64,000 nt of DNA from Bugula neritina (Eukaryota; Animalia; Bryozoa): assembly GCA_964035545.1 (NCBI GenBank), contig OZ037769.1:6987929-7051928 (forward strand), read 5' to 3'. This document shows positions 28,770 through 52,000 of this stretch, in pieces (position 1 is the first letter of the stretch; each line of letters starts with the position of its first letter). The notes below the pieces were generated by a model. It searched no databases. It was given only the letters and a program-made list of their open reading frames with translations, and was not told where the DNA came from. The position numbers and the translations under genes were made by a program.

Positions 28770-29830
28770 CTAGTAGTCTAGTATGCACACAGCAGTAGTA
28801 CTACTAATATTACTAATATTATAATAGTATTACCAGTAGTACTAACCTCGTTACCCAAACAGGACAAAGCGGAGATAGGTGAGGTGAGAATTACTAGTAG
28901 TACTAATAGCAGAAGTGTTCCACTATAGAAACGAGCTCTAGTACAATCGTGAGCACTACTACTAGTGAGTCTAGTGGGAACTCTTAATAGTTATACTGCT
29001 AATACCACTAGTACCACTAGATGTAGTCACACTTATAGTAATACTAATACTAATCGTAATAGCTAATGTTAGATTTCAAGTTCAACTTATATATAGCTAA
29101 TGTTATGTTATAGGTAATATCTACATTATAGTATTACTATTAGTTATACTATAACTAATACTTATAATTATGCTATAAGTATTAGTATAATATTAAGAAC
29201 AACAACTATAACTATAAGCTAAACTTAAACTTAAAGTTAAAGCAAGTTATACTAAAAGTAAATATTAATATAATACTTACACTTAGACTTTTAACTATCA
29301 CTAAGTTTTAGTTAGAGTTAATAGTTAAACTTATAGTTACACTTAATCTTATAGTTATAATATCAATATGACTTTTTTCTATCAGCATGACTATTAGTAT
29401 TAGCATCACTATGACTGTATGAGTATGAATAATTATAATAGAGTAAATGTAATAGTTTAATACTAATACTTAATCTTTACTCATAGTCATAGTGATAGTA
29501 TTAGTTATAGTCATAGTGTGAGTCATTATTATACTTATAGTTATAGTTATACTTATAGTTATAGTAATCATGTAACTCAAAGTGTATTGACTATTGAATC
29601 AAATTCAATAAAGTTATAAACACAATCAGTATCAGTATCACTCAAAGCCTAATACTCAGAATAGTAATACTAATAGTAATAGTAATAGTAATGGTAATCA
29701 CTAACTCTAAGTCTAATCAACTAAGTCTAATGCTAAGCCTAATGGCTAATGGCAATAAATATAATGATAATCACTAATCAGTAAAACTAAATCTAAATCA
29801 GTAAATGACTAAATCACAATGACAATGATT
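28770..29830. repeat. Extended low-complexity region with 3/6-bp periodicity (TAG/TAC/TAA/TTATAG)
   Basis: Mosaic of (TAGTAA)n, (TTATAG)n, (AACTTA)n and (CTAATG)n stretches between the ASH2L and dystroglycan-like 5' ends. Confidence 0.75.
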
Positions 29831-31093
29831 GAATGAATATATTACATTCCTGCAATGGTGTACTACATAGAAAATTTGGCATAAACATAAACTAAAACTG
29901 TAAAGCTACATGTATGGTCTAACTAGGGAGAGATGGTAAAATTTATGAACTAGTGGATCTTATTCAAAATTAATGTGTTATTTTGTTACAAATATTTGAA
30001 TGAAAAAAATTGGTGATCTAGTTTTCGCGATTCCAATATCGGTTGGTTTCAAAAAACATACTTGCACGATATGTAATATAATTATTTGCAGCAATATGCA
30101 TTAGCCCTAGAACCTAGATTGTTCATGGCACTCTCTTCTTTCTGAAATTCGAAAGATGTTGCCTAGGACGCTTTCTGGACCAAAGACGGAGGGAAAAGTG
30201 ATTGAAATAACGATTTAGCACGATCAACCTCAATATGATAGTGATAGTTGTCAGCCTGATATTTTAACCACAAAAACCTTATGGTGAGTCTATGATAATA
30301 TTTTAGAGAAAATTTTACTTTAATGAATAACATTAAGTTTAACTGTTCAATTTTTACTTCAAAACTCAGATTGAGTTTGTTAATGTTACAGAACAGAAAT
30401 AAGTTAAACTTAAACTTAAAGTTGCTATATTATTAATATTAATAATATATTCGTATAAATATATAGTAATTATTTTATTTTTAATAGTATTAAGGTATAA
30501 TATTGACAATAAAATTATTAATATGGAGTATTACACATTTTTTGGGTTATAATAATGTTGATTTTGATTTTATATGATCACATGACGATGTTTTGTAAGT
30601 GTTATAAATCTAAGTGTTGGGACATAAGATAAAGATTCAGATTGAAAATAAGCCTATCAGTATCATTATCATTAGCGATAGGTGATAAACTTTACGCTTT
30701 AATGATCATTTGTGGATCACTCTTAACATAAAACTAGATGTAACAATGATGCTTTAGTTAATTTTTGCTTACCATTGTGATTGTCATTCTGATTATAGTG
30801 ATTATAGTCAATGTTATGTTTCAAATTTAAGCTAATTTTGTCATTTTAAAGCTTGTTATAGAAAATTTTTGTATTGAGTCAGTTGTTACAGTTGATATTT
30901 AAATTTAAAAGTACAATTTAATTTTGTTTCAATTATAGGTTTCTTAAATTTCAATTTTTATTTACAATTTGTTAAATTTGAGCATTTATTTGAGTATACA
31001 TACATAGTAATTTGATATTTTTCTATATCTTTTAGGTTCAACTAAAAGATGCTAAGGTATTGAGTATGATGTGCTAGATATGACATCTTAAGT

Positions 31094-34000
31094 ATGGCGC
31101 TAGGTCTTCTTACCCTTACAGCTATTGCCTTATTCTGTGGACTTGTTTCTGGTGCTTTATTTACCAATATTAGCATTGTGCCTGGAAAGTATTTCCAATA
31201 CACTCTATTGGCCAATGAAAAGGTTAGTCAACTATGAGGTCCTATTTTTTGTGAGGTATTTTTTTATAGCATTTTGAGTGTACTCAAATTTTTGCACTTT
31301 AAAGTTTTTTGGAAAGTTTATTTCATTTTTAATTAGAAAAGTTACTAAATTATCAGTTCTCATGAAAACTATACACACCATTTGATATTTTTTTTCATTC
31401 TATTCTTGGTTTGTTAGTAAAACATTGTTGTACAAATCCGTAAACAAGAAATTAGTTATGTAATCAGAGAATTTTTGCACTTGTCCCAAACAATCTCAGT
31501 CTTTATTTGGTTTTTATAATTAACTCAGTTGCCTGTTGAATTATGTTCACTTTACTAAAAATAAAAAGATGCTAACGAAAAAGCCATTGTAACTGATATA
31601 AGTTTTACCTTTGATAATATTATGGTTTGTTTTGTTTTATCTTCTTAGCTATTACACTGCAACATAGTTTGGCAAAAATATTATCGTGGCAACCATCAGT
31701 AGATGGCTAAACCTATTTCACTTTTTTTGCTTTTATTGAAGCACTGAATATTATGTGTTGAGTATTTGTCAAACTGAGTTAATAAATTGCTTAAATTTTG
31801 CTGTAGCAAAAAAATGGCGATATTTCAACTGCATTCATTGGTTGAATGGTTTAACTTTAGGCTAATATTTTTGATTGTAGCTTGCAGACGTTTCTAGTGA
31901 TGTTCAAGATCCGTGGATATATTATGATGGAGAGTGTCACTGTGTTTCTGGTGTACCACTACAAGGACAAACCTCTCTGGTTAGTAGAATCAGTTACTTC
32001 AGTTCTGAAAATGTTTGACCAATGTATTTAGCTTGATACTCAAGTATGTTTTATCGGAGTGTGTTGAATGCATGGGTGTCTGGTGTGTTTTTGGTGTGTG
32101 TCTGCTAATGTCTGCTTCGACTACATCAAGGATGGGGCCATTATTGGAGCAAAGTTTGCTCAAATTTTCTCTACAGTAGAAGTATTTTAGTCCTACATGA
32201 GGATTATGATTATAGTATACCCTTTGTAAAAAGTAAAGCTGGTTACTTTAGCAGTTTATACAAATTTGCATATATAACAAAAAGTTTAGTTTTTGAAATA
32301 TTGTGAATGTACCTTTTTCTACTGTTCAAATTTTATTACTCAATAGCTGTTTGCTTGTAAACACAAGCCTTAATGAGCCATGAAATGTAAAGTACTATTT
32401 ATTAGCTTCTATAGGAAATGCTGAATGACGTGTGTTTAAGTTTGGCACCTTCTAACTGATGGCCATTGTATTTACTGCTTTCATAAACTCAAAGAATTTT
32501 TTATTCAAACCGTTGAATGAAATTGCATCAAAATATTTGCTTAGTGGTTTATACAGTTCTAGACTTCCTTTGAGCTAGTTTCTTTGACATGAGATATGCA
32601 GCTGAGGCCTGTATAAATATTAGGCATAGCTTGATAAATTAGGTGCTGCAACAGCGAATTTTCAATAGCAGAAGTTATTGAATGTTTTATGAGTTTTGTT
32701 TTTCCCAGTTTCCTGTTGCTGCACCCACCTCTGCTTAACACATGCCTTTACACTTCACACTAAAGATTTTGTTGTGTGTTTTAGATTAGTATTTTAGACA
32801 CAACATGCCACCTCTGCCCTCCTCATAGACTGGAGATTGCTGTGTCACAGGCTAACAATAGCCTGAGGAATCACGGGCTTACAGCCATGTACACGAAGTG
32901 CAGGGAGTTGGACAACCCAGTGTCTGTCATACTAAGATTTGGTTTACGAAAGGCAGGGCTGGACAACAAGGCCAGGGTGAGTGGTTAATCTATATAGATA
33001 GACTGCTATTGAACTTCTTGTAAACTGTGCAAATTACTACACTTTTCTGAGAAAGGGAATTCTTTTTCTCCCTCCCCCTCTCTCACTCCCCTCTCTCTAC
33101 ACTCTCCCCTCTTTCTACATTCCCCCTCTCTACACTCCCCCCTTTTTCTCTCTATCTATCTATCTATCTATCTATCTCTTTACAAAATGGCTGTAAAGGT
33201 CTAAAAGTATTATGCAGACTAAGCACTCACTACCAAACAGTGAACTCATTTCGGCTTTTCTTTTTATACTATTACAAAATCATTATAATATGTATTGCGA
33301 GTGATATCTCCACTGAAGATTGAACCCTCTTGATGCCAACTCAGTTGTCTGTATAGCCTGAACTTCTACTTGTTGAACTGTCATGAGCAGCAGCTTGCGC
33401 ATTGTTCATTCTACTGTGTGTAGCTTCATATCTGACTTCTGACCTGTAATAACTGAGGGAATTCTAGTTCCCCTCAGTACAGCATATCTATATAATACAG
33501 TTTTATCCGAGTTGATAAGGACCTCTTCACATAATCATTTTTGCACATAATGTATAAACAAGTAAAATAGAGAAGCAGCAAAATGAAATGATCATTCCGA
33601 TATAATGTAACAGAAGAATTGGAACTTATAATTTGAAAAAATATTTGTGTGCAATAAAGTCTTTGTATCATGTACAGTAAAATATGTTTGGGTGAAAGCA
33701 AGTCATTTCAACTGAGATATGAGTTGTCTCACCAATGCCTATTACTGTTCCCTCTGATTGGCTAGCTGCCTGTCCCAATATGGTTATTGCATCAAAATGA
33801 GCCTTGGCCTTCTGTGATGTAACTGTTCACAAAAATACATGAATCAAAATATGTTAGTACACTCTTTATGATTATTTAATTTTGTTACTAATTTTCTGCA
33901 ACTACTATATAATAAGTTGTTTGTTATATGCAATATGCCTAGAGATAGTAATTATTATAAATCCCCGTTTAGCTGAAGCAGTGGAGAAATTGTAGCACCG

Positions 34001-37000
34001 TACAATCCTCAACTTTTCTTTAACAAATCTTGGTTTGAGGCGTTGGTCGAAATTATCATGATGACAACTTATTTCGCCACATTTCAAATCTAGAACACAG
34101 GCTTTACTCAATTTCTCCATTACTGCATCTACCTCTTGGTGATGAAGTGTTCTAACTTGTTGAAAATAGCAATAGCTTTGTTTGGTTGGTTTGCACTATA
34201 CGAAGTGGTTCATTATTTGTCATGTAGTACAGCAGGTTTAAGTTAAGATTTTCTAAAACTTGGGTTCAAAGCGAACCGACATTTAAACTATCTCAATGCA
34301 GTAATCACAATGGGAAACATGTGCGTATTCACATTCATTATAGTGTTTGCAATTTAACTTTATAACAATCTAAACTTTCTGGTTCTAAAATAAATTTGTG
34401 TGTGTGTAAAACTTAACCAAATATAATATAAACATCATTCCTAGTTGTTGCAATGCACTTAGATTGTATCTATTGGTAAATTAGCACTTCTGTTTTGGAT
34501 TGCTTTAGGTTCTCCTTCTGAATGATTTGTCAAAGGAACTGAACGTTGACGTTAGCCTTTTGACTATGAGCAAAAGAGTGTCTTATATGAATATTTTACA
34601 AGCATGGTCAGGGGAGGTAACTACTGAAGTTGATGACAGCATAGACGTTTTCTGGGACTTATCATGTCAAAATGTAAGTCAATATTTTTTGAACCTATTA
34701 GGTACCTTAATGTATATATTAGAAACACTTTTGTTGTAGGCAATTTACTTTCCTAGATATGAATCAGAAGATGTTTGATTTTTGTCAGTCCGATTTCTTT
34801 TAAGTGCTTTTAGGAACCTGCAACAAGCACTATGGTAATGTTTCAATATGAGTCTTAGATCTTGTCTAATGAAGATAATAAAACATTTTTAGGACATTAA
34901 AACAAGCAAATGAAATACTAGATTGATCCAAAATGGTGCAATGTATTTTCTAGCTATATTAAAATGTTTTCCAAGAAATCTTTGTATTGTTTAGGAAATA
35001 AAAACAAATATCTACAAATACAATAATTTAAAAATATTTTCTGCCTAATGTAGTACTAATAAAATTTCTTTTGCGGTACAAGATTTTGTGCAGCATGATT
35101 TAATGTGCTGTAGTCACAAAACAGCATTAAAGTTAGTAAAAGAATGGTTCTGATGTGTGTTGAAGTACTCTTCAAGTTGATGAACTCCATCCACCTCCTT
35201 GAGTTTTCTGTAGATGGGTTAATTATAGTCTACAATACAGTAAATTATGATGATAGAACTTTATAAAAACAATAGATTTTCTTTACGGCCAGTACATCAT
35301 ATCATATACTGAAATAATCAATTATTTAGTAATTTGAATTAAAAAGTATTCAAATTGGTACATAATGTAATTACTTATTTATTTATGTTCTATTTCTTTA
35401 CCAATTTGTAATAAAACCTAAATTCATATGGAGGGTTTTCAAGCAGACTAAAGACTGCACCTTCTACCATGCTGGCAACATATAGTTTTTGAGTTTTTTG
35501 TCTAAAGTAAAGATGAATTACGACTGCCGATTCCCCTCTTGACATTGCCAGTGGCCATGCAGGGCTACGAACTCGGCTAGCATTCTAATCTGTGGACTAC
35601 TGCCGCTTCCAATGTTAATATTGTTGAATAATAGAATAGTTATTTATTAGCTTTGCTGATTGCAGCTAAGTATACTAACATGTAGTTGTCTGTCCCCATC
35701 CACCAGGAGCTGTAGTGGTTGGCTGGTAATGACCAGAACCTCCTTTAGGACCTCTATCTCCTTTAGGACCTGTATTTCCTTTGGGTCCACGTGGGCCCTG
35801 CTTACCTCTTTTTCCCCATGCACCTGAACATAGATCATAAATTATTCTAGTGTAGGACTAAAGACAACCATATAGTGTTAGCTTTATCAAATTCTTAATT
35901 TGCTTTTAGTGAAATTTCTAGACTCTTTCTTGCTGTGCTTAAAATGACTCAGAAAAATGAGCCAAGCACTTGATTTTTACATTATCGTCATAATATCTGG
36001 TTATACTATGCAGCATATAACAGACCAATTTCTAAAAGATTTTATGCCTGCAGTAGTTTAAGTGATTAAAAAGAGATAATCATTTATATTCTAAAATTAA
36101 GCTATTTCTGGAAACACACCTGTAGGACCTGTAAAGCCAATCGTTCCTGTTGGCCCTGTTGGGCCTGTGTTTCCAATACGTCCCTTTTCTCCTTTTGATC
36201 CGCTATTTCCCTTTGAACCTGTGTCACCTTTGATTCCTTTTTCAGTGCTTCCCTTGTCACCTGCAAAACATTGAGAAATAATTTTATTTTGCAAGATTCC
36301 ATTTGAAGTTATCAAAAATTTATTTTCTAGTAATAACTATTTGAAGTGCATTTATAATAAGTTTTGAAGTAAATATAAACATTATAATATAAATAATTTC
36401 TTATAATAAATGAATTTTATAATGAATATGATTATGAGATATTATGTATTGGTTATAAGTACACTGTGTAAGTGTTAACTTGTTAGCATAATTTTCTTAC
36501 CAGTATCTCCTTTATGTCCTTTGCTGCCTTTAGAGCCAGTACCACCAATGTTGCCTTTATCTCCTTTTGGTGCATCTTCCCCTCCAATACCTTTATTACC
36601 CTTGAGCCCCTGGCCACCCTTAGTACCTCGAAATCCTTTTTCGCCTTCTCCACCCTTGAATCCTTTTTCTCCTGTTGTACCTTTTGCTCCGTCAACACCT
36701 TTATGACCATCAACCCCTTTAGAGCCAGATTCACCCTTTGTGCCCATGATTCCTTTGAGGCCTTTAAAACCCTTATCACCTTGGGCACCTTTTGGTCCAA
36801 TAATACCCTTTTCTCCCATATCACCTTTACTTCCTTTGGTACCAAATTCTCCTTTAGCTCCCTTTTCACCTTGGTTGCCGTTGATTCCTTTATTACCATT
36901 CTGACCTTTGTGACCTTTTTCTCCTTTATTTCCGCCATCTCCTTTAATACCTCCAATTCCTTTATTTCCTTCAATACCTTTGTCACCTTTAACTCCTTTG

Positions 37001-40000
37001 TTGCCATTCTCTCCTTTGACTCCCTTATCACCTCCTTCTCCTTTGACGCCTTTAAATCCACTACTTCCTTTCTTCCCTTCACTTCCTTTAACTCCCTGCT
37101 CACCTTTTTGGCCAGTAGTGCCTTTGTCTCCTTTGTTACCTGCATTTCCTTTGACTCCCTTATTTCCAAATTCACCTTTAACTCCTTTCTCACCTTCACT
37201 CCCTTTGAAACCTTGGTCACCAAATTCACCTTTGTTACCTTTTGCTCCTTTAAGGCCTTCTTCACCTTTTTGGCCAGTATTACCCTCTTCTCCTTTGTCA
37301 CCAACCTCACCTTTAGTCCCTTTATTACCAGCAATGCCTTTGGCTCCTTTGCTACCTTGCATGCCTTTAATACCTTTACTGCCGGTTTCTCCTTTGTTGC
37401 CCATTGTTCCTTTGAGTCCCTTTTCACCTTTAAATCCACCCATGCCTTTATTTCCTTTAGCACCATTCTCACCTTTTCCCCCTTTAATCCCCACTTCACC
37501 TTTGGTTCCCTTGTCACCTTGATTGCCTTTAATACCTTTGTTACCAGTTTCTCCTTTATGCCCTTGGTTTCCTTTAACTCCCTTGTCACCTTGAAGACCA
37601 TTTTCTCCCTTCTCTCCTTTTTGACCTTCAATACCTTTAGCTCCTTTATCACCAACTTCACCTTTATCTCCCACATTACCTTCATCTCCTTTGACTCCTT
37701 TAAATCCACTACTTCCTTTATTCCCTTCACTTCCTTTAACTCCCTGTTCACCTTTTTGGCCAGTAGTGCCTTTGTCCCCTTTGTGACCAGTATCTCCTTT
37801 AACTCCCCTATTTCCAATTTCACCTTTGACTCCTTTCTCACCTTCACTCCCTTTATTACCTTTTTCACCAAATTCACCCTTGGTCCCTTTGGTACCTTTA
37901 AAGCCCGTTTCACCTTTAAACCCAATGGAGCCTTTATTTCCTTCACCACCTTTATTTCCTTTAGTACCTGTATTTCCTGTTTCACCTTTTTGTCCTTTGC
38001 TACCTTGCATGCCGTTGGTGCCTTTACTGCCAGTTTCACCTTTGTCACCCATCGTTCCTTTGCTACCCTTTTCACCTTTAAAGCCACCCATTCCCTTATT
38101 ACCATTTTCCCCTTTTTCTCCTTTAAAGCCCATTTCACCTTTTTGTCCGTCAAGACCTTTATTGCCTTGTTCACCTTTATTGCCCTTTTGTCCATTGGTA
38201 CCTTTACTACCTTCAATTCCTTTTTCTCCATCACTTCCTTTACTTCCCTTTCCACCTTTAACACCATCCATCCCAGTGTTTCCTTTATTGCCTTTGACCC
38301 CTTCAATACCTTGTTCACCTTTATCACCTTCAACTCCTTTAAAACCTTGAATACCTTTGGACCCTTTCTCACCAGTATCTCCTTTATGCCCTTTACTTCC
38401 TTTAAGTCCTTTTTCACCATTTGAACCTTTACTTCCTTGTTCTCCCTTTTGACCTTTTTCTGCTTTAACACCTTTCTCTCCGGTGTCACCTTTAACTCCT
38501 TTAGCACCCTGTTTACCCATAAAACCTTTGTTACCATTTTCTCCTTTAAATCCCATGTTTCCTTTAATGCCTGTTTCACCTTTATTTCCGTTGTCACCTT
38601 TTTGTCCTTTCTGGCCTGTCTCACCCTTAAACCCTTTATTGCCAATTTCTCCTTTAATTCCTTTATCTCCTTGATTTCCTTTATTCCCATTTTCACCAAT
38701 TTCACCTTTGTGCCCCTTTTCTCCTTTATCGCCTTTCTGGCCTTTGAAACCTTCAAATCCTTTGCTGCCTTTGAGACCCGTTTCACCTTTGCCTCCTTTA
38801 TTTCCACTCTCACCTTTGATGCCTTTATTACCATCATCACCTGTAAAGCCTTTAAAGCCAATTTCTCCTTTATATCCTTGGGTTCCTTTAAATCCTGTCT
38901 CTCCTTTCTGGCCATCACTGCCCTTTTCTCCCTTATCACCCTTTTCTCCATTGATTCCTTTATTGCCATTTGTTCCTTTAATTCCTTTATCTCCTTGACT
39001 GCCTTTAATTCCTTTGTTTCCTTTATTACCTTCCTGTCCTTTGACTCCCTTATTACCTGCTTCACCTTTGAGTCCATTCTCACCTTGTCCACCCTTGTGT
39101 CCTTTTTCACCCTTGGCACCTGTGTCACCTTTTTTCCCCATGACTCCTTTGTTGCCGTTGCTTCCCTTAGCCCCTTTGTTGCCATCATCTCCCTTATTAC
39201 CAACCATTCCTTTATTTCCTTTTTCTCCCTTAGACCCATCTTCACCTTTACTACCAAACATTCCTTTAACGCCTTTAGTTCCTTGCTCTCCTTTTGTTCC
39301 TTTGTTACCACCATCACCCTTATTGCCTTTGTTCCCATCTTCTCCTTTAAATCCATTTTCTCCTTTACCACCTTTGAGTCCTTTTTGCCCTGTTTCTCCT
39401 TTATTTCCTTTGAACCCTTCTTCCCCTTTATTGCCTTTAAACCCTGTATTTCCTTTGAGGCCCTTTTCTCCTTTAATGCCTTTGCTGCCAGAAAATCCTT
39501 TATCTCCTCTCGGACCTTTTTGACCACTTTCTGCTTTGATTCCTTTAAATCCTTGAGTGCCTTTTTCACCTTTGGGCCCAATACTGCCTTTGATTCCTTT
39601 ATCACCCATTTGACCTTTACTACCTTTATTTCCTTGCTCTCCTTTAAATCCTTTTTGTCCATCAGTTCCTTTGGTACCCGTTTCTCCTTTATGACCTTTA
39701 GTTCCTTTTTCTCCTTCTTCACCTTTTGTGCCTTTCTCCCCATTATTTCCTTTATCACCGTTGATACCTTTATCACCAGCGTGACCCTTGATACCCTTTG
39801 GACCAACAGCTCCATCTTTACCTTTTGCACCACTCTCTCCTTTGTCACCTGCCATCCCTTTGTTTCCTTTTTGACCTGTGACACCCTCATCACCTTTGAA
39901 TCCTTTATCACCAAATTGCCCTTTAATTCCCATGTGACCTTTAATACCTTTAGCTCCCTTTTCACCTTTTTCACCAGTTTTGCCTTTAATGCCTTGATTG

Positions 40001-43000
40001 CCTTTAATCCCTTGCACACCCTTTTGACCAACTTCACCTTTAAGTCCCCTAGCTCCTTTTTCTCCTTTACATCCTTTGAGACCCCTTTCTCCTTTTTCGC
40101 CCACATTCCCTTTATTTCCTAGCATTCCTTTCTGCCCTTTAATACCTTTTATACCTTTCAAACCTGTTGCTCCAGTAGCGCCAACTTCTCCTTTAACACC
40201 TGTGCTTCCAGTAGGACCTAAAATACTTTAAGTTGTTAATTAAATAAAAAGCGCATTTTGTGCATAATATTTTATATAATATTATAATGTGCACTATGTC
40301 CTTTATACTAAAGTTACATACCTGTAAATCCTAGGCCACCTGAAAACATATAAATAAATATATAATATATATATTGCATATATATGAAACATTGAATGCA
40401 TAATGTGCAAGTTGTAAGTGGTGTGTATAAATTGTAAATGCGATAACTCATTATCAACTGCCATCATGCAGATATAATACATAAAATGGTTGCAAACTAG
40501 TGATTACTAATAAACAATCATAAAAAGAAAGTCATTTTTATTCTAAATTTATTATTGTATTTACTAGTTGAGATATCAACTCAAGGGTATTATCCAAAAT
40601 AAAGATAATTAAATTGAAGCTATTACTAATTGCATATATGGTTGCTACTAATTTTTATTGGGTTAGCTTCCATGTTGGTGAAATTGTTTTTCCTTATATG
40701 GATAACCTGGATGTCTTCTGAAAGTCATTATGTAATAGTTTTTAGTATAAATACATGTAACATGAGTTTAAAAATGGAGATAGCTAAGTCTAACGAACCA
40801 ATGTTTCAAAAACTCAACACTGCCTAAGTGGTGACTTCATTTATTTTGAGCTCTGTGCAGTTCTGATTCGCTTATTTTCTATTAATTACATGCAGCTAGC
40901 ATTTGATTTGATAAGGATTTTTAATATATACACTGGATTAGAGTTATATCAATAACCATGTGTTTAGCTGATGGTCAACAAATTAAGTTAGCCATGCAGT
41001 CTTTCTCTATGTTTGTCTGTTTTTGCTTTATGCTTTTCTTTGACTATTAAATATTTTATACATGCAGGCTTTGAAAATAATTTTGGCTATTATAGGGTTT
41101 GAACTTTACTTCCCAAATTGATTGGCAGTATATCAAACCCTATACTCGAAACATACACACTTACAAATTTCCATATATTAATTTATTCATGTGCATCATC
41201 TTTCTTTCTTGAGGCTGAACCTACTATTAGCTTTCTACCTAAAATTAGGTAAAAATTTATTTTTATACATTAGCCTAAAACTTTTCATCCTGATTCAATA
41301 ATTTAATTAAATGTAACCCCAACCTTTAGGTCCAGTAGCTCCGATTTCTCCTTTGACTCCCCATCCAGCGGGTCCTCTAAGACCTCGTACTCCCCGAGGT
41401 CCACGATCACCTTTTGGCCCAGGAGGGCCTGGCGGACCAGCAGGTCCTGGTTTACAGTAGCAAGGGTTCTCAGTGGTCTTTGCAGTTCCTCCCCAACCAG
41501 TAGGAGGGGTTGTATACGTCTCCGCTCTTTTCTCTCTTCTTAGCTGAAATAGGAATAAACCAAGTTAATTGTTTTAGTTTTAATTTTCTTTCAAAGTAAT
41601 TTTATTTTGCTTGGAAGTGTTACAAATCTCACCTCAACGCCAGTAAATGCCTTGGCTATTTGTTGGTTCAGGTTGTTTGTCTTATTCTCGACATGACCTA
41701 CTCTGTTGATTATCTCCACTTTCTGAGCCTCTGATATTTCAAGTTTGACTTGCAACTCATAGACTGTCTTTAAAAGTTGGACATAAAACACCCCAAGAGT
41801 GGCCACTGCTCCCAGGACGAACAGACATAAAGTAAATTTTAGTATGGCAGTAGTGTTCTTGCTTTTCCCTGGCTTGAGGCTTGGTTCTACAAACCCTTTC
41901 TCCATGTTGTCTGTTGAAACCTAAAGCATAAGTTGGTTAGCTGTATACAGTGTTTTCTCTCTCTTCAAAATTCTGCAAGACCTTAGAGTTTAGTTCCATG
42001 TGACCTTCTGATCTATTTACTGCAGCTGACTGCCATTTTGAAAAGTTTTAATTTTCTGAACAGAAAGGACGTAGTTTTATTTATAATTATTAGGCTCAAT
42101 ATTATCTTACTATCGTGGTAGGTTACAGTTTCCTGTTGTAACACACATTACATTAAATATGCTAGCAGTTGTTTGAGTGTATTGAAGCGTAATATAGTCA
42201 TTTTATATTGCAATGCTGTATTCTATGTCCAACTTCAATATGTATTCTGATAAGAAGTGAACTGGGTTTACTCTGTTATTTGAAAAAGTCAAGGCGGTTG
42301 GAGATAATCAACAGAAACAGCACACCATTGATTATTAGAATAAACTCCATTAAACCCTAAATACTACAATAACAAACTAATAACAAAAGTTAAAATTTTA
42401 ATTTCCTAATTTTGTGAACTTATAATTTTTATTGACATATTTTTATAAGATCACCGTAAGAATAAAATAAGAAATTATTAATCCTAGGTTTTAAACTGTA
42501 GCATAGAAAATTAATAAGTGTGCCAGAATGTCACATTACACAAGTACTACAACATACCTGTTTGCTGGTGTCAGTGCAGAGTGTCTAACTTCCAGCTGCC
42601 TGTCACACTAAATATACAGTGGTGGATTTTTATAATGTTTTATAGGTCCATTATTTCAATTTGTCCTCGAATGCATTGCTGGTGTTTATAGCCTACCAAT
42701 GTGAAATTATCACGAAGGAAAGTTTGGTTATAGACAGCTTATGGTAGTTATTACACATTAAACATGATAATGTTGTTCAGCGTGCTATTAATAGTTTATT
42801 AGCAGCCTATGTTATTATATTATATTCATAGTTTGAGATGAATCAATTTTTTCAAGTCAAGATGCATATAGTTTAGAAATATGTTTTCAATTTAGTTTTG
42901 TTGACTACGTATCAATGTTTGACATTTAATCAAATGCAAACCAAGAGATTTGATTGACTTGGTTTTCTTGTTTGTCTGTGGAGATAAATATATCAAATTT

Positions 43001-46000
43001 TAGGGTTTCTTTCATTGACATGCAGCTTCATATCTCCCTTATGTAGCTCAACCTTTACACACACGCACACACGCATATCACTTTCATTCAGAAGATTAAT
43101 TGTATATTAACTTGTAGGGTGGTGAAATAGTGTTGCTCATGTAGCTGCATTTCAACGTAGCTGTTATATTTTACAGACAGACTTTGTGTCTGAGATGGTT
43201 GCCTTAATCTCTCAAGGCGTTCAGAGCTCTCAGTTCTCTCGTGCAGCTGGACATCCTGTCATCAGTTGGTTTCTTAAAACAAGAAGACCCATTGCAACAT
43301 CTAAACGTAGATTGAGAAGAGCTGTGTTATCTACAGCATTGCCCACCACTCTATCAACACCAAGTGTGTCCACAGTGTCTACAAATAGCACAGCTACTAC
43401 AACCAGCCCAGCTACAACAAATGGTACAATGTCTATAAATAGCACAGCTACTACAACCAGCCCAGTAACTACAGATAGTACAATGTCTATAAATAGCACA
43501 GCTACTACAACCAGCACAGCTACTACAGATAGTACAGTGTCTATAAATAGTACAGCTACTACAACCAGCACAGCCACTACAAATAGTACAGTGTCTATAA
43601 ATAGTACAGCTACTACAACCAGCCCAGTAACTACAAATGGTACAGTGTCTATAAATAGTACAGCTACTACGACCAGCACAGCTACTACAGATGTTACAGT
43701 GTCTATAAATAGCACAGCTACTACAACCGGCCCAGCTACTACAGATGGTACAGTGTCTACAAATAGCACAACTACTACAACCAGCCCAGTAACTACAAAT
43801 GGTACAGTGTCTATAAATAGTACAGCCACTACAACCAGCACAGCTACTACAGATGTTACAGTGTCTATAAATAGCACAGCTACTACAACCGGCCCAGCTA
43901 CTACAGATGGTACAGTGTCTACAAATAGCACAACTACTACAACCAGCCCAGCTACAACAAATGGTACAATGTCTATAAATAGCACAGCTACTACAACCAG
44001 CCCAGTAACTACAGATAGTACAATGTCTATAAATAGCACAGCTACTACAACCAGCACAGCTACTACAGATAGTACAGTGTCTATAAATAGTACAGCTACT
44101 ACAACCAGCACAGCCACTACAAATAGTACAGTGTCTATAAATAGTACAGCTACTACAACCAGCCCAGTAACTACAAATGGTACAGTGTCTATAAATAGTA
44201 CAGCTACTACGACCAGCACAGCTACTACAGATGTTACAGTGTCTATAAATAGCACAGCTACTACAACCGGCCCAGCTACTACAGATGGTACAGTGTCTAC
44301 AAATAGCACAACTACTACAACCAGCCCAGTAACTACAAATGGTACAGTGTCTATAAATAGTACAGCCACTACAACCAGCACAGCTACTACAGATGTTACA
44401 GTGTCTATAAATAGCACAGCTACTACAACCGGCCCAGCTACTACAGATGGTACAGTGTCTACAAATAGCACAACTACTACAACCAGCCCAGTAACTACAA
44501 ATGGTACAGTGTCTATAAATAGTACAGCTACTCCAACCAGCCCTGTAACTACAAATGGTACAGTGTCTATAAATAGCACAGCTACTACAACCAGCCCACC
44601 TACTACAGATAGTACAATGTCTACAAATAGCACAGCTACTACAACCAGCCCAGTAACTACAAATGGTACAGTGTCTATAAATAGTACAGCTACTACAACC
44701 AGCACAGCCACTACAAATAGTACAGTGTCTATAAATAGTACAGCTACTCTAACCAGCCCAGCTACTACAGATAGTACAGTGTCTATAAATAGTACAGCTA
44801 CTACAACCAACACAGAAACAACAAATAGTACAGTGTCTACAAATAGCACAGCTACTACAACCAGCACAGCTACTACAGATGTTACAGTGTCTATAAATAG
44901 TACAGCTACTCCAACCAGCCCAGCTACAACAGATAGTACAATGTCTATAAATAGCACAGCTACTACAACCAACCCAGCTACTACAGAAACTACAAATGGT
45001 ACAGTGTCTACGAATAGCACAGCTACTACAACCAGCCCAGTAACTACAAATGGTACAGTGTCCATAAATAGTACAGCTACTACAACCAGCACAGCTACTA
45101 CAGATAGTACAGTGTCTATAAATAGCACAGCTACTACAACCAGCCCAGTAACTACAAATGGTACAGTGTCTATAAATAGTACAGCTACTACAACCAGCAC
45201 AGCTACTACAGATGGTACAGTGTCTACAAATAGCACAACTACTACAACCAGCCCAGTAACTACAAATGGTACAGTGTCTATAAATAGTACAGCTACTACA
45301 ACCAGCACAGCTACTACAGATAGTACAGTGTCTATAAATAGCACAGCTACTACAACCAGCCCAGTAACTACAAATGGTACAATGTCTATAAATAGTACAG
45401 CTACTACAACCAGCACAGCCACTACAAATAGTACAGTGTCTATAAATAGCACAGCTACTACAACCAGCACAGCTACTACAGATAGTACAATGTCTATAAA
45501 TAGCACAGCTACTACAACCAACCCAGCTACTACAGAAACTACAAATGGTACAGTGTCTACGAATAGCACAGCTACTACAACCAGCCCAGTAACTACAAAT
45601 GGTACAGTGTCCATAAATAGTACAGCTACTACAACCAGCACAGCTACTACAGATAGTACAGTGTCTATAAATGGTACAGCTACTACAACCAGCACAGCTA
45701 CTACAGACGGTACAGTGTCTACAAATAGCACAACTACTACAACCAGCCCAGTAACTACAAATGGTACAGTGTCTATAAATAGTACAGCTACTACAACCAA
45801 CCCAGCTACTACAGAAACTACAAATGGTACAGTGTCTACGAATAGCACAGCTACTACAACCAGCCCAGTAACTACAAATGGTACAGTGTCTATAAATAGT
45901 ACAGCTACTACAACCAGCACAGCTACTACAGATGGTACAGTGTCTACAAATAGCACAACTACTACAACCAGCCCAGTAACTACAAATGGTACAGTGTCTA

Positions 46001-49000
46001 TAAATAGTACAGCTACTACAACCAGCACAGCTACTACAGATGGTGCAGTGTCTACAAATAGCACAACTACTACAACCAGCCCCGTAACTACAAATGGTAC
46101 AGTGTCTATAAATAGTACAGCTACTACAACCAGCACAGCTACTACAGATGTTACAGTGTCTATAAATAGTACAGCTACTCCAACCAGCCCAGCTACAACA
46201 GATAGTACAATGTCTATAAATAGCACAGCTACTACAACCAACCCAGCTACTACAGAAACTACAAATGGTACAGTGTCTACGAATAGCACAGCTACTACAA
46301 CCGGCCCAGCTACTACAGATGGTACAGTGTCTACAAATAGCACAACTACTACAACCAGCCCAGTAACTACAAATGGTACAGTGTCTATAAATAGTACAGC
46401 TACTACAACCAACCCAGTAACTACAAATGGTACAGTGTCTATAAATAGTACAGCTACTCCAACCAGCCCAGCTACAACAGATAGTACAATGTCTATAAAT
46501 AGCACAGCTACTACAACCAACCCAGCTACTACAGAAACTACGAATGGTACAGTGTCTACGAATAGCACAGCTACTACAACCGGCCCAGCTACTACAGATG
46601 GTACAGTGTCTACAAATAGCACAACTACTACAACCAACCCAGTAACTACAAATGGTACAGTGTCTATAAATAGTACAGCTACTACAACCAGCACAGCTAC
46701 TACAGATAGTACAGTGGCTACAAATAGCACAACTACTACAACCAGCACAGCTACTACAGATAGTACAGTGTCTATAAATAGCACAGCTACTACAACCAGC
46801 CCAGAAACTACAAATGGTACAGTGTCTATAAATAGTACAGCTACTACAACCAGCACAGCTACTACAGATAGTACAGTGTCTATAAATAGCACAGCTACTA
46901 CAACCAGCACAGAAACAACAAATGGTACAGTGTCTACAAATAGTACAGCTACTACAACCAGCCCAGAAACCACAAATGGTACAGTGTCTATAAATAGTAC
47001 AGCTACTACAACCAGCACAGCTACTACAGATAGTACAGTGTCTATAAATAGTACAGCTACTACAACCAGCATAGCTACTACAGATAGTACAGTGTCTATA
47101 AATAGTACAGCTACTACAACCAGCATAGCTACTACAGATAGTACAGTGTCTATAAATAGTACAGCTACTCCAACCAGCCCTGTAACTACTACTAGAGGAT
47201 TTACATCAACAATTCCTATTACAAGTTCAACATCTAACAGCACACTGTTCACTACTTCTTCAGACTTGGTTTCAAACATCACTCAGTCGTCAACATCTTC
47301 CACATCAAATACTACATCTATAATGTTCAACACTACCACTCTACTGCCAGCTGTTAACGTTACAGTGACGGCACCCACTAGTTCTTTCGCTCCAACATCC
47401 AATACTACAAGGCTATTTACGACAACGTCCAGCACATTGAATACTACGATCAAAACAACCCTTTTCACAACCCCAGATCTGAATAGCACATTGCCTTTTA
47501 ACACTACGCAGTCTTCGACTTCTTTTGCAAACTCCACATTGCCATCAACTACTCCTACAATCTCCGTATCCACCACCACATTACTGTCTAATTCCACAAC
47601 TCCGATAGCAACACCTACCACGCCAGCAAATTCTACTCAGTCAAACACAACGATGCCTTCAACTACTGCAGTACCGATGTTCAACAGCACTCTATCATCA
47701 ACAACTGAAGTATCAGCACCCAATACAACGTTGTCAACTTTAGGTACCACATTGTCTGGTACTACAGATGTAATGCCAAATAGTACACAATCAACAGAAC
47801 TAACAACAGGCTCTACTTCAATGTCAACTAATACTACAATTCAACCATCAAACAACACATCTACTTTGTCAACACTAACTTTTGAGTTAAACACTACAAC
47901 CGCTTCAACATTTACTTCTGATTCAACTGTAACTGTTGTGAAGTCCACTTTAAACACTAGTCTGTCAACTACCACCACTTTAAATACTAGTCTGTCAACT
48001 ACCACCACTTTAAACACGAGTCTCTCAACTACCACCGCTTTAAGCACTAGTCTCTCAACTAATACCACTCTACAACTAAATACTACACAGCTGACAACCT
48101 CAGCAAGCTCAACTCTGAACTCAACCCAGCTACCAACAACTACTACGGCTCCACCAAACAACACAACTCAACAATCAAACACTACCACCACATCCTTACC
48201 AACTAATAATACCTTTAACACCGAAACAGTTCCAACATCAAATGTCACATTGTCACCAAGTACGACATTGACAGCTCTATTAAACACTACACTTTCATCA
48301 TCAGCTGCTAATACAACTATTGTGCCAAACACAACGCTGCCATCAACCCCTAACACTCCTTCAACTCTAAACTCCACCATGCAACCAACAACAGTTATGA
48401 TTTCAACGCCGGACTCAACACTAAACACAACTGTGATTTCACCATCAAACGCAACGACAATGAGTTCTACTACAGATACAATCACCTCAGGTTCAACAGC
48501 GGCCACTATAAATTCAACAACCTCTACAGGTTCAGTTTCGAATACCACAGCACATTCTTCGACAGCTACCACTTTGCCAATTACCAGCTCTTTAAAACCT
48601 CCTACAAGTAAGAAACATTGTATTTGTTTTCAGTGCATTGTATTTTTTGCTCATTTTGTTTGCAGTTTCGTTGACTTCTTAAGTTGTTTATGTTAAAAAT
48701 CTGTTGTTTCAAGGCTGCATATAACTTTCTAGCAGGAAACCAACATAGTTACCTTTTATGTAAGTGGTTGTGTTGTTAGTGGTAGTTGCTGAGACTTATG
48801 ATACTGAGGGTAGTTATGAGCACTTATCTAGATGGTTAGTTTTTTCAACTATATTATTTAGCATCAGCTACGACGCCGATGTCAAACCCGATTGTTGTGA
48901 ACTCTGTCCCAGAAGTCCTTGTCAAGTTTGGAGTTCACTTTCTCTATAGAATTCCTAACAATACTTTTTATGATGAGCAAGATGGCTGGACAGGAAATCT

Positions 49001-52000
49001 TCAGCTTTCCCTTACAGATGACAATAGAAAGGTTGGTGCTTGTTCTAGAGCTGTGTGTACATGTGTAATAAGCAGTTTCCACTAATATTTTATCTTTATA
49101 ACTAATTTAGTTTTGGTGTAGTGTAAATTATTATTGCATTTGTGCAGGGAACAATCCGGTTTTACTGTACATTTCCATGTGCATTTTATGTTACTTCTAT
49201 GTCACTACGTTTCCATTGTTGGAATGTCTACTCAATCAGATCAGTTGAAAGTCACACATTCCTATATATAGTAGATTAGACTTCTCAAAGAATGACAACT
49301 CTAAGTAAACAGGCCTTTAACTCTGCTGTACATTTGGACAAAAATAGCCAATATTAACTTATTTTGGAGCTATTACTTTGCTGCAAATGTTAAAGATTTC
49401 CATTAATGCTATCAATAGGTTATACCTTGGAACTTTTTAGCTGTTGTATATGAGCCTATTTAGGATACTGTATAACACAACTCACTTACTCAATATAAGT
49501 CTGCATAACTTCAATTAGTTGATGTTACTCTAACATTACCAGCACCTGTGACACTGTTAATTGGGAGATTTGACTGTCTAGCGTTACAAAAATAGAGTTG
49601 AACGACAGACTAACACGCTACTTGTGGAGATGGCGCTACATTAGCACCAGCTGCATCACCAATTGCTTTATATCCTCTATCGTTTATTATCCTGTCTGAG
49701 TAATATATTATCTGAGTTCCAGTTAATACTTTACTGCTGATGTTCTCTGCTGAGTCAATAACTATGAGTTGAAGTTGAAACCATTGTTGGTAAACATCTT
49801 TAAGTTAGATGGCTTTTTAGATGACAAATTGCAAACTGTTAATCTTGTTTTATTGTAGGCTATTCATTCAGTGCCGTGGCTACAGTTCAATACTAAATCT
49901 CAGACTCTGCAAGGGTTAGCAGTGCCTCCCTTCTACACCCGAGAGTCTGGTGACAGAGTAAACCTCACTCTACGGGCCACAGACAGCACGGGGCAGACAG
50001 CATCTAGTCTTCTCACAATAGTAATATCATCGGATGACCTGTTCAAAATATCTCACGTCTTTGAAATGAATATTCGAACTGACTTTGTGTTGTTCACATC
50101 TGGTATTGAGCATGTCTCGTGGTGGGCTGGTAATATCACTGAATTCTTCAATAACTCTATAGACTCAATTCGAGTCCTAGAAGTTCACAACGCGTCGAAG
50201 ACATCAGTGATAGTCAAATGGTCTAATAACACCATTAATAATATCATACCTCCATATACGTGTCCTTTAGCTGATATCTTGCATGGGCTAAACCAGATGA
50301 GATCTGAGCTGTTCCAATCTGATCTCAATCAATTCATAATACAAGATGTGACTCTGGAGCTCCGTGGTGTGTGTCATGACTTCACCACGGCCCTTCCTTT
50401 GGCTACCTCTACACCTGAACAGATTACAACAGACTCTGCTAGCACCACAACACCTGTATCTATAGTCAGTAGGTTGTCAACTTACTTGAATGTATTTTAG
50501 TCAATGGGATGCTGCCGGTCATTCTTGACTTGTGTTGAATATTTAGTGTTGAGTGCAGAACCAGTGAAATGTGGTGCTCCAAATACAGCTTACAGCGAAC
50601 TGTGTGTATGTGTAATTATTTTTGTTTTACAGCCACTACAGCTAATCCACAGCCAATGGTAACTTCTACACTGGATGTACTTACTGTAGATTCTGGTATT
50701 TACTTTGAATATCAGATTCCAGAAAATACATTCTTAGATCTACAAGATGGAAACACAAGAAATCTCACTCTATCCTTACTAGACACTAACAGACAGGTGA
50801 ATATGTACATACGCCTACTGTTATACATACATGTATAAGTCAAATACTAAACCCATTACTGGGTGCTATTAATTTCACTGGAAGACAGCTGTAATATTAT
50901 ATTATATTAAATAATTCTGTTTACAGCCACTACCTCATGACTCATGGGTACAGTTAGACAGAGTTGAGCAGAAAGTATATGGACTGACAGTGTCACCATT
51001 CTGGTCTGGTATTTCCACTCAGTATAACTACACTGTGAGAGCATCGGATAGTCAGGGTAACCAGGTGCACACAACTCTAGTAGTCAGCATCTCTACCATC
51101 AATTCAGTGAGAGTGTCCCATTCCTTCAGTATGAGAATTCTCACAGACTATAGCCTGTTTACCAGTGAACTATCTCATGCTATATGGTGGGTGGGTAACG
51201 TGACCGCCCACTTCAATGAAAGTCTTAACGATATCACCACACTGAACATTGTGGACAGTGAATCTCCAGGTTTAGTGATATCCTGGTCTAACAACACTAT
51301 AAATAGTATAAATCCACCATACACGTGTCCTCTCTCCCTTATATACTCCACCTATTCTGAGTTAACTAGTGAGTCATTCCAATCAACTCTGAGTCAGTTT
51401 ATCATTGAGTCAGTCGAACTGAAACTTCAAGGTATCTGTGAAGGTTTTGATACGACTACTTCACTAATGACTACACCAACCACTACAGTCACCACACCAA
51501 CCACTACAGTCACAACGTCAACAACCACTTCAACTACAACTACACTGCCTCCCACCACAAGTATGATTTTTATCTTTTCATTATAAAATTATTATACCAA
51601 ACATTTTTATATTCTATTTTCTGTGAAATTTAAAGCATAGTGTATATCAGTTTGTTTTGTTGATTTGTTTTACAGCCACTACAGCTAATCCACAGCCAAT
51701 GGTAACTTCTACACTGGATGTACTTAGTGTAGATTCTGGTATTTACTTTGAATATCTGATACCAGAAAATACATTCTTAGATCTACAAGATGGAAACACA
51801 AGAAATCTCACTCTATCCTTACTAGACAGTAACAAACAGGTGTGTATTACTATATACTAGAGTATAGACACTAACAAACAGGTGTGTATTACTATATACT
51901 AGAGTATAGACACTAACAAACAGGTGTGTATTACTATATACTAGAGTATAGACACTACCAAACAGGTGTGTATTACTATATACTAGAGTATAGACACTAA

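What the first reader, a model, noticed from the sequence alone, without database searches (positions are those of the whole stretch)
34674..43176. ECM ligand-type gene nested antisense inside an ECM receptor gene (collagen in dystroglycan-like intron)
Seen: a complete 6-exon transmembrane collagen with its own putative TATA and first exon lies wholly within one intron of the dystroglycan-like gene. Both products are predicted to be furin-processed surface proteins: a very Lys-rich collagen rod and a heavily glycosylated mucin rod. Inference: a possibly co-evolved adhesion/cuticle/attachment module (co-expressed, perhaps interacting), or mutually exclusive expression through transcriptional interference.
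Basis: partly seen in the sequence, partly recalled or inferred. Interest (0 to 1): 0.8.

Follow-up and report, generated by a model that had tools for sequence, protein, structure and literature searches.

The report
Collagen gene nested in dystroglycan-like intron
In a bryozoan (Bugula-type) genome, a complete gene for a membrane-anchored, very lysine-rich collagen sits backwards inside one intron of a dystroglycan-like gene; such nesting is common in animals, and nothing found here shows that the two genes work together.

Summary
On the minus strand, six GT-AG coding exons (41905 down to 35675) with consistent phases encode a 1505-aa collagen. Its layout is a type II membrane anchor, a juxtamembrane coiled coil, an RREKR furin-type site, a CxC motif, and then about 1,370 residues of Gly-X-Y. 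It lies wholly inside a phase-0 plus-strand intron (34674-43176).

A profile built from 56 dystroglycan N-terminal domains picks the two flanking exons (34509-34673 and 43177 onward) among the top three of 205 open pieces. Their profile coordinates are colinear and nearly adjacent. The intron therefore splits one alpha-dystroglycan N2 domain, and the flanking exons belong to one gene.

Contigs from a Bugula neritina sample (87% nucleotide identity) keep the collagen 5' half next to the host acceptor, with exons more conserved than introns.

The functional reading is untested. The context argues for an ordinary, probably neutral nesting:
- The collagen is one member of a dispersed family of membrane-anchored, furin-site collagens in this genome.
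- The host is a six-module paralogue; the better dystroglycan match lies 8 Mb away.
- That gene and a third N2-domain locus have no intron at this position, and that gene holds no nested collagen.
- Published surveys find that most host/nested pairs are uncoupled.

Moderate-to-low interest.

The parts
31094..31222 (+). Host putative first coding exon: ATG plus a signal-peptide-like hydrophobic N-terminus
   Evidence: Open piece and hydropathy peak. Best donor AAG|GTTAGT, phase 0. Sequence-based inference only.
31881..31979 (+). Host exon b: Ig-like/CADG motif of the dystroglycan N-terminus
   Evidence: Deep dystroglycan N-terminal profile, positions 6-33, E 0.014, second of 205 pieces. hhalign E 0.012 on the same motif.
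32785..32976 (+). Host exon d (tentative; acceptor uncertain): start of the S6-like N2 domain
   Evidence: Open frame with donor AGG|GTGAGT, phase 0. No significant profile match. Placement is by eye only.
34509..34673 (+). Host exon e: middle of the alpha-dystroglycan N2 domain, immediately upstream of the host intron
   Evidence: Profile positions about 110-167, E 0.016, third of 205 pieces. Splice sites ttag| and AAT|GTAAGT, 165 nt, phase 0.
34674..43176 (+). Host intron (8,503 nt, phase 0) that contains the whole collagen coding unit
   Evidence: The acceptor and the first 119 nt of the next exon are conserved in contig L013.
35643..35648 (-). AATAAA polyA-like signal 27 nt after the collagen stop
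   Evidence: Motif only. Further candidates at 35383 and 35104, all inside the intron.
35675..35823 (-). Collagen exon 6: Pro-containing triplets, GWG, terminal Cys, stop TAG
36120..36260 (-). Collagen exon 5
   Evidence: Pfam Collagen 30.3 bits. Splice sites.
36501..40217 (-). Collagen exon 4: 413 in-register Gly-X-Y triplets, Lys-rich and almost Pro-free
40322..40339 (-). Collagen exon 3 (18 nt, two triplets)
   Evidence: Splice sites and phase. 100% identical in L013.
41324..41543 (-). Collagen exon 2: RREKR furin-type site, GWG, CxC, then Pro-rich start of the triple helix
   Evidence: The relative carries an in-frame 18-nt insertion just after the site.
41633..41905 (-). Collagen exon 1: ATG, short Lys-rich cytosolic end, membrane anchor, coiled coil
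   Evidence: Three-chain coiled-coil model 0.73 against best control 0.02. Single copy in the genome. 10 synonymous against 4 non-synonymous codon changes relative to L013.
42075..42090 (-). TATA-like element about 175 nt upstream of the collagen ATG
   Evidence: 16 of 16 bases identical in L013. Function not tested.
42517..42766 (-). Block conserved at exon level (about 94%) with TATAAA motifs and a donor-like CAG|GTATGT. Possibly an alternative promoter plus a 5' non-coding exon of the collagen
   Evidence: Sliding identity against L013 and sequence. Inference only.
43177..48696 (+). Host exon f: last third of the N2 domain, KRRLRR furin-type site, then a mucin repeat of about 1,830 aa
   Evidence: BLASTP E 0.003 against the paralogue; profile 183-223, E 8.7e-5.
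48879..60489 (+). Rest of the host gene: six tandem CADG plus DAG1/SEA-like modules, membrane span, and a cytoplasmic tail with a PPxY-type motif
   Evidence: Pfam DAG1 29.4 bits against a cut-off of 23.3; six self-matches; hydropathy 3.35.

Best explanation
This is a genuine host/nested gene pair whose members most likely act independently.

The nested gene encodes a type II membrane collagen. A juxtamembrane coiled coil brings three chains together. The triple helix then zips along about 1,370 residues, with Pro-rich triplets at both ends and a Lys-rich, Hyp-free core probably stabilised by Lys-Gly-Glu/Asp ion pairs. A furin-type convertase cuts after RREKR and releases a polycationic rod into the extracellular matrix or cuticle.

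The host encodes an expanded dystroglycan paralogue. Its N-terminal domain is removed at KRRLRR. It also has a long glycosylated mucin stalk, six CADG/SEA-like modules, a membrane span and a PPxY-type tail.

The collagen, one member of a dispersed family, came to lie in an intron specific to this paralogue, and the arrangement persists because it does little harm.

Shown here: the gene models, the nesting, the domain assignments and conservation in a close relative. Inferred: cleavage, shedding, trimerisation in vivo, and independence of the two genes.
For: - Gene model and phases.
- Pfam Collagen hits.
- Composition.
- Coiled-coil trimer model: 0.73 against best control 0.02, a mark reached by 21 of 30 solved pairs of one chain and 0 of 23 single chains.
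- The host intron splits one N2 domain: supported.
- Pfam DAG1 over its cut-off, and six modules.
- A better dystroglycan match lies elsewhere (DAG1 79.6 bits, N2 44 bits in a single exon). It has no intron at this position and no nested collagen ORF.
- Other loci share the anchor, furin-site and CxC collagen layout (L019, L022).
- The relative's contigs keep the arrangement. Exons are 93-100% identical without frame-breaking gaps, against 86-89% for the long intron and the intergenic DNA.
- Host/nested pairs mostly show no expression relationship: PMC11694760.
- MACIT and nematode cuticle collagens use the same anchor-plus-convertase logic: PMC4678570 and PMC10538796.
Against: - No RNA evidence of any kind was obtained, so co-expression or antagonism is simply unknown.
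- Both products are extracellular-matrix or cell-surface proteins. One is strongly cationic and the other is expected to be heavily glycosylated, so an interaction is physically conceivable.
- The nested collagen is the only Lys-rich member seen (20% Lys, against 10% or less in the seven other loci sampled). It has therefore diverged in a way the neutral account does not explain.
- Nesting is conserved in the one relative available, but that relative is too close to be informative.
Confidence: 0.62

Rival explanations
1. Regulatory coupling by transcriptional interference. Transcription of the host, about 29 kb long, runs antisense through the whole 6.4-kb collagen unit. The two genes therefore cannot both be highly active in one cell, which gives either/or expression in neighbouring epithelial cell types.
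For: The geometry fits: opposite strands, and the collagen fills about 73% of the intron. Interference between host and nested genes is documented in other systems (PMC3192792, title and abstract listed). One early human survey reported anticorrelation (Yu et al. 2005, as summarised in PMC11694760).
Against: Later and larger surveys find anticorrelation rare and most pairs uncorrelated. No expression data were obtained here.
Confidence: 0.2
2. Functional module. The shed polycationic collagen rod binds the glycan-rich mucin stalk of its host's product to build an apical matrix, cuticle or adhesive, and the nesting keeps the two genes linked and co-regulated.
For: Both products are predicted to be convertase-processed surface or matrix proteins. 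The collagen rod has a net charge of about +105 per chain. The host mucin exon is dense in Ser/Thr and N-glycosylation sequons. The arrangement is retained in a Bugula neritina sample.
Against: The other family members sampled (L019, L022) are not in the dystroglycan genes found. The better dystroglycan match lacks both the intron and a nested collagen. The only relative available is too close for its synteny to mean anything. No co-expression or binding data exist. Dystroglycan's known matrix partners bind through laminin-G domains (general knowledge), and this collagen has none.
Confidence: 0.08
3. Not truly nested. The exons at 31-34.7 kb would form a separate small gene, and the mucin/dystroglycan-like gene would start near 43.1 kb, head to head with the collagen.
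For: No read-level evidence for the 34673-to-43177 junction. Exon e gives no BLASTP or hhalign match to the paralogue. Exon d has no significant match.
Against: Exon f begins in the middle of the N2 domain (profile position about 168 of 226) and has no start codon followed by a signal peptide. Exons b, e and f are the top three of 205 pieces, colinear and nearly adjacent in profile coordinates. The phases match, 0 and 0. The acceptor at 43177 is conserved in the relative.
Confidence: 0.05

Closest known systems
Host/nested (intronic, antisense) protein-coding gene pairs of metazoans
   Same: A complete gene with its own promoter-like region lies in one intron of another gene on the opposite strand, which is the arrangement surveyed in PMC11694760.
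   Different: This particular pairing, a membrane collagen inside a dystroglycan paralogue, was not found in the literature searched. Both partners are matrix or surface proteins, which may be coincidence.
MACIT collagens (XIII, XXIII, XXV; C. elegans COL-99)
   Same: Type II orientation, short cytosolic end, juxtamembrane coiled coil, furin-type site next to the membrane, and a shed collagenous ectodomain (PMC4678570).
   Different: MACITs have 3-7 collagenous domains separated by non-collagenous ones, are about 600-800 aa long, and have a conserved C-terminal region. This protein has one almost continuous helix of about 1,370 residues, 20% Lys and 0.5% Pro in its core, and no specific sequence match to MACITs.
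Transmembrane cuticle collagens of C. elegans processed by BLI-4 (e.g. SQT-3)
   Same: A membrane anchor in place of a signal peptide, an N-terminal RxxR-type site, Cys residues flanking the Gly-X-Y region, and release into an apical matrix (PMC10538796).
   Different: Nematode cuticle collagens are about 300 aa long with short interrupted Gly-X-Y blocks. No match to any nematode cuticle collagen family appeared among the Pfam hits for exons 1 and 2. The phylum differs too.
Dystroglycan (DAG1)
   Same: The host has an Ig-like plus N2 N-terminus ending in a furin-type site, a mucin region, CADG plus DAG1/SEA-like modules, a single membrane span and a PPxY-type tail.
   Different: It has six tandem CADG/SEA-like modules instead of one, a mucin exon of about 1,830 aa, and introns inside the N2 domain. 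A better single-module dystroglycan match lies at C5:15.41 Mb, so the host is a paralogue.

Membership tests
Host/nested gene pair | The nested coding sequence lies wholly within one intron of the host | tested here: met
   CDS 35675-41905 lies inside intron 34674-43176.
Host/nested gene pair | The exons flanking the intron belong to one host transcript | tested here: met
   Tested by homology only. Exons e and f occupy nearly adjacent parts of one N2 domain profile and their phases are compatible. No junction reads were obtained.
Host/nested gene pair | The nested transcript ends (start site, polyA site) lie inside the intron | not testable with these tools
   Only motifs are available: a conserved TATA-like element at 42090-42075, a possible 5' exon at about 42559-42700, and AATAAA at 35648.
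MACIT collagens | Type II membrane anchor with a short cytosolic N-terminus | tested here: met
   Hydropathy peak 2.26 over residues 24-42, after a Lys-rich N-terminus of about 20 residues.
MACIT collagens | Juxtamembrane coiled coil (NC1) that nucleates the trimer | tested here: met
   Three copies of residues 42-91 model as a heptad-register bundle. Score 0.73 against best control 0.02, a mark reached by 21 of 30 solved pairs of one chain and 0 of 23 single chains. This is a model only, and the calibration used two copies.
MACIT collagens | Furin-type site in NC1 | tested here: met
   An RREKR motif sits directly after the coiled coil. Cleavage itself was not tested.
MACIT collagens | Several collagenous domains separated by non-collagenous domains, plus a conserved C-terminal region | tested here: not met
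   There is one near-continuous helix. Exon 4 has 413 in-register triplets with 3 Gly-to-Ala changes, and only short register breaks occur in exons 2 and 5. No MACIT-specific match appeared in the word search.
Nematode-type cuticle collagens | Cuticle-collagen N-terminal domain and short Gly-X-Y blocks flanked by Cys clusters | tested here: not met
   No such Pfam family appears among the hits for exons 1 and 2 at E up to 1. Only the CxC before the helix and the single terminal Cys resemble the layout.
Dystroglycan (DAG1) family | DAG1 (SEA-like, transmembrane) region | tested here: met
   PF05454 scores 29.4 bits against a cut-off of 23.3 on 58312-59043, and 22.5 bits on the last exon. The genome scan gives 28.3 bits.
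Dystroglycan (DAG1) family | N-terminal Ig-like plus N2 (S6-like) domain ending in a furin-type site | tested here: met
   Met exon by exon: profile E values 8.7e-5, 0.014 and 0.016, colinear. Pfam PF18424 itself did not report the split exons. The joined domain was not searched.
Dystroglycan (DAG1) family | Single CADG plus SEA-like module, i.e. being the species' dystroglycan orthologue | tested here: not met
   This gene has six modules. A single-module gene with much stronger matches (DAG1 79.6 bits, N2 44.2 bits) lies at C5:15.41 Mb.

The most novel reading that the evidence does not exclude
The nesting is not accidental. A polycationic, hydroxyproline-free collagen rod shed from the cell surface docks onto the glycan stalk of the dystroglycan-like protein encoded around it. 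Embedding the ligand gene in the receptor gene locks the two into a co-inherited, reciprocally regulated unit that builds the bryozoan cuticle or attachment matrix.
Probability: 0.06. Interest if true: 0.75.

Novelty: new member of a known kind. Interest (0 to 1): 0.3.

Why it matters
If the pair were functionally coupled, it would be a rare case of a matrix ligand gene physically embedded in its receptor gene. That would give a handle on how bryozoans build their cuticle or attachment matrix.

As the evidence stands, it is a well-formed example of an ordinary genomic arrangement. Its practical value is for annotation. The long plus-strand open frames across 36.5-40.1 kb are antisense artefacts of the collagen. 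The dystroglycan-like gene must be modelled across an 8.5-kb intron. The species has both a standard dystroglycan-type gene and an expanded six-module paralogue.

The collagen itself is probably of more interest to collagen biochemists than the nesting is: 413 uninterrupted triplets, Lys at 60% of Y positions, and almost no proline.

Tried and rejected
After that, no letters of 40355-40392 were sent to any search tool. One slip: a local script translated the whole of 29000-43600, those places included, for a local hmmsearch. Later scripts left them out.
2. Pfam on the single host N-terminal exons found nothing. The PF18424 genome scan did not report the split exons.
3. BLASTP of exons d and e against the paralogue found no alignment. 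hhalign of exon e against a two-sequence profile found nothing. One search had a frame error.
4. A two-sequence HMM recovered only exon f as significant.
5. PDB sequence search with exons e and f gave no hits.
6. A word search with the start of exon f gave no hits.
7. A word search with collagen exon 4 returned only generic collagens at 30-45% identity and no orthologue.
8. A word search with exon 1 returned only the close relative P0001.
10. Literature searches found no paper linking bryozoans, dystroglycan and nested collagens, or describing a comparable Lys-rich collagen.
11. The idea that the collagen is a recently inserted retrocopy was rejected, because it has five introns.
12. The long plus-strand ORFs at 36514-38424 and 38437-40122 were rejected as host exons. 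They are low-complexity mirror images of the Gly-X-Y codons.

The spliced protein models of both genes were never joined. Every search was done exon by exon by reference, so no whole-protein family scan, fold or search was run.


Full report
WHAT THE WINDOW IS

The window is G000:C5:6987929-7051928 of a 216-Mb assembly. Earlier notes on this genome call the animal a moss animal, that is, a bryozoan. The only close relative of the collagen's first exon in 5.8 billion proteins sits on two JGI metagenome contigs. Their record names carry AY690838, which is the GenBank accession of the Bugula neritina mitochondrial genome (PMC2678162). Those contigs are 87% identical to the window at nucleotide level. 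The window is therefore from a Bugula-type bryozoan, and the contigs are from a close relative.

THE NESTED GENE

Reading the minus strand gives six coding exons with GT-AG borders:
- Exon 1, 41905-41633
- Exon 2, 41543-41324
- Exon 3, 40339-40322
- Exon 4, 40217-36501
- Exon 5, 36260-36120
- Exon 6, 35823-35675 (stop TAG)

Intron 1 is phase 0. Introns 2-5 are phase 1 and split a Gly codon. The lengths sum to 4518 nt, or 1505 aa.

Exon by exon:
- Exon 1 encodes a Lys-rich N-terminus of about 20 residues, a hydrophobic span (Kyte-Doolittle 2.26) and a heptad-repeat segment.
- Exon 2 opens with RREKR, followed by GWG, a CxC motif and Pro-rich triplets.
- Exon 4 is 413 in-register triplets with only three Gly-to-Ala changes. 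It is 20.4% Lys (Lys at 248 of 413 Y positions) and 0.5% Pro. It holds 63 KGE and 18 KGD motifs and has a net charge of about +105.
- Exons 5 and 6 return to Pro-containing triplets and end in GWG and a terminal Cys.

Pfam Collagen scores above its cut-off on exons 2, 4 and 5.

Three copies of exon-1 residues 42-91 model as a parallel bundle with a heptad contact pattern. The score is 0.73 against a best control of 0.02; that mark was reached by 21 of 30 proteins solved as pairs of one chain and by 0 of 23 solved as single chains. The runs agree in at least 97% of contacts and the partner pLDDT is at least 85. The calibration held two copies, not three, and a pass is a model, not a measurement.

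The layout is therefore anchor, coiled coil, convertase site, then a long triple helix. This is the logic described for MACIT collagens (PMC4678570) and for the transmembrane cuticle collagens of C. elegans (PMC10538796).

THE HOST AND THE CRITICAL TEST

On the plus strand, a 5.5-kb exon starts at 43177 behind a ttttacag acceptor. It begins in mid-domain, reaches KRRLRR, and then runs through about 1,830 aa of Ser/Thr-rich repeats dense in N-x-S/T. Downstream lie six CADG plus DAG1/SEA-like modules, a membrane span and a tail with a PPxY-type motif. Pfam DAG1 reaches 29.4 bits against a cut-off of 23.3.

Single-exon Pfam, BLASTP, hhalign and PDB searches were too weak to decide. Only the start of exon f matched a paralogue (BLASTP E 0.003).

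I therefore took these steps:
1. I aligned the two single-exon N2 domains found elsewhere in this genome.
2. I searched 1.84 billion representatives with that alignment.
3. I cut 54 full-length dystroglycan-type N-terminal stretches from the hits.
4. I built a 226-position profile from those and the two genomic domains (56 sequences).
5. I scored all 205 plus-strand open pieces of 29000-43600 against it, leaving out 40355-40392.

The top three pieces are exactly the predicted exons:
- Exon f: profile 183-223, E 8.7e-5
- Exon b: profile 6-33, E 0.014
- Exon e: profile 110-175, of which about 110-167 falls in the exon, E 0.016

They lie in genomic order. The aligned part of e ends at about profile position 167 and that of f begins at 183; the envelope of f starts at the 43177 acceptor. 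Both intron borders are phase 0, and exon f has no plausible start codon followed by a signal peptide. The intron 34674-43176 therefore splits one alpha-dystroglycan N2 domain, and its flanking exons belong to one gene.

Exon d and a small exon c remain tentative.

GEOMETRY

The collagen stop is 1,001 nt from the host donor, and the collagen ATG is 1,271 nt from the host acceptor. The CDS span fills about 73% of the intron.

A TATA-like element at 42090-42075 is fully conserved in the relative. A second block, 42517-42766, is conserved at exon level. It carries TATAAA motifs and a donor-like site, so it could be an upstream non-coding exon. AATAAA follows the stop by 27 nt. All of these lie inside the intron, but none is verified.

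CONSERVATION

Contig L013 is colinear with window 43295-39977. It carries the host acceptor, the first 119 nt of exon f, the intergenic DNA and collagen exons 1-3 with the start of exon 4.
- Exons are 93-100% identical, without frame-breaking gaps.
- The long intron and the intergenic DNA are 86-89% identical, with indels.
- Exon 1 shows 10 synonymous against 4 non-synonymous codon changes.
- Exon 2 shows 7 against 4, plus an in-frame 18-nt insertion.

This supports the exon models and rules out a mis-join at that end. The relative is too close for the shared nesting to say anything about function.

CONTEXT THAT BEARS ON THE INTERPRETATION

1. The host is not the best dystroglycan match in this genome. 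A single-module gene at C5:15.41 Mb scores far higher (DAG1 79.6 bits; N2 44.2 bits in one exon). It has the usual N2, mucin, CADG and SEA-like/transmembrane order and no nested collagen ORF. A third N2-bearing locus lies on C4. Neither has an intron where the collagen sits, so the host intron is specific to this paralogue.
2. The collagen's exon 1 is single-copy, but the genome holds many long-exon collagens. At least two of them have the same layout of membrane span (with a coiled coil seen in L019), an RRKR or RVKR site, CxC and Pro-rich onset: L019 on C4 and L022 on C2. The nested gene is thus one member of a dispersed family. Of the loci sampled it is the only Lys-rich one (10% Lys or less elsewhere).
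3. Published surveys of host/nested pairs report that most pairs show neither correlation nor anticorrelation (PMC11694760).
4. An earlier, unchecked note reports a second antisense nested gene in this same 64-kb window. If true, that suggests nesting is frequent in this compact genome.

WHAT COULD NOT BE DONE

Sixteen runs hold part of the stretch. Twelve of them are guessed to be RNA, come from four studies, and each hold up to about 0.2 of the sampled words (most 0.15-0.20). The host exons make up only about 4% of the stretch, so that share hints that part of the collagen is transcribed. Without laying reads this is not evidence.

A local script did translate them; later scripts avoided them.

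Word searches found no orthologue of either gene beyond the close relative, and both metagenome scans were empty. Deeper synteny is therefore untested. The spliced models were never joined: all searches were exon by exon, and no whole-protein scan or fold of either product was made.

VERDICT

The proposed functional link is neither supported nor excluded. The family context, the paralogue-specific intron and the published base rate make an ordinary, probably neutral nesting the best explanation (about 0.6). Transcriptional interference is second (about 0.2) and a true ligand-receptor module is a long shot (under 0.1).

It is a new example of a known kind of arrangement. The unusual collagen chemistry and the six-module dystroglycan paralogue are the more noteworthy items, and other findings of this scan already cover the collagen.

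Noticed in passing
G000:C5:15412110-15425769 (loci L009, L011, L015, L016) and G000:C4:18336973-18337341 (L010): A single-module gene with much stronger dystroglycan matches lies 8 Mb away on the same chromosome. It has N2 in one exon, a 559-aa Pro/Thr mucin exon, and a SEA-like region containing SGSVVV, a membrane span and a tail. A third locus with a dystroglycan N2 domain lies on C4. The species therefore has at least three dystroglycan-type genes.
   Followed up: partly
window 48879-60489 (+): The host carries six tandem CADG plus SEA-like modules, and modules 2-4 look nearly identical by eye (about 45% to module 6). Only module 5 (58312-59043) keeps a Gly-Ser motif (EGSVVISW) like the alpha/beta autoproteolysis site of dystroglycan. 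The other modules have other residues there.
   Followed up: no
L019 (G000:C4:17045000-17054999), L022 (G000:C2:33080000-33086000): Other collagen genes share the layout of membrane span (a coiled coil seen in L019), RRKR/RVKR site, CxC and GP-rich onset. The one in L019 has an open Gly-X-Y frame of at least 2,919 aa that runs off the fetched piece. The genome scan reports open frames of up to 3,506 aa there.
   Followed up: partly
L017, L018 (G000:C2:13480000-13497000): A tandem cluster of long-exon collagens built largely of GNTGATG-type triplets. They are Asn/Thr/Ala-rich with 2-4% Pro and 4-10% Lys. This is a second kind of Pro-poor collagen in this genome.
   Followed up: no
window 42517-42766: A 250-nt block in the DNA between the collagen ATG and the host acceptor is as conserved as exons (about 94% against L013). 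On the minus strand it has TATAAA motifs and a CAG|GTATGT donor-like site. An acceptor-like ttag|G sits 15 nt before the collagen ATG. This may be an alternative promoter plus a 5' non-coding exon.
   Followed up: partly
window 36514-38424 and 38437-40122 (+): Plus-strand open frames of 636 and 561 aa lie opposite the collagen exon. They are stop-free mirror images of the GGN-NNN-AAA codon pattern (Phe/Ser/Thr/Leu low complexity). They could be mis-called as genes or host exons.
   Followed up: yes
L013, opposite window about 41519 (collagen exon 2): The Bugula neritina-sample contig has an in-frame 18-nt insertion that duplicates a Thr/Pro-rich hexapeptide directly after the RREKR site. The new N-terminus of the shed rod is therefore length-variable between close relatives.
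   Followed up: partly
window 34400-43400: Twelve runs guessed to be RNA, from four studies, each hold up to about 0.2 of the sampled words of the stretch (most 0.15-0.20). That is more than the host exons alone (about 4%) could give, which hints that part of the collagen is transcribed.
   Followed up: no
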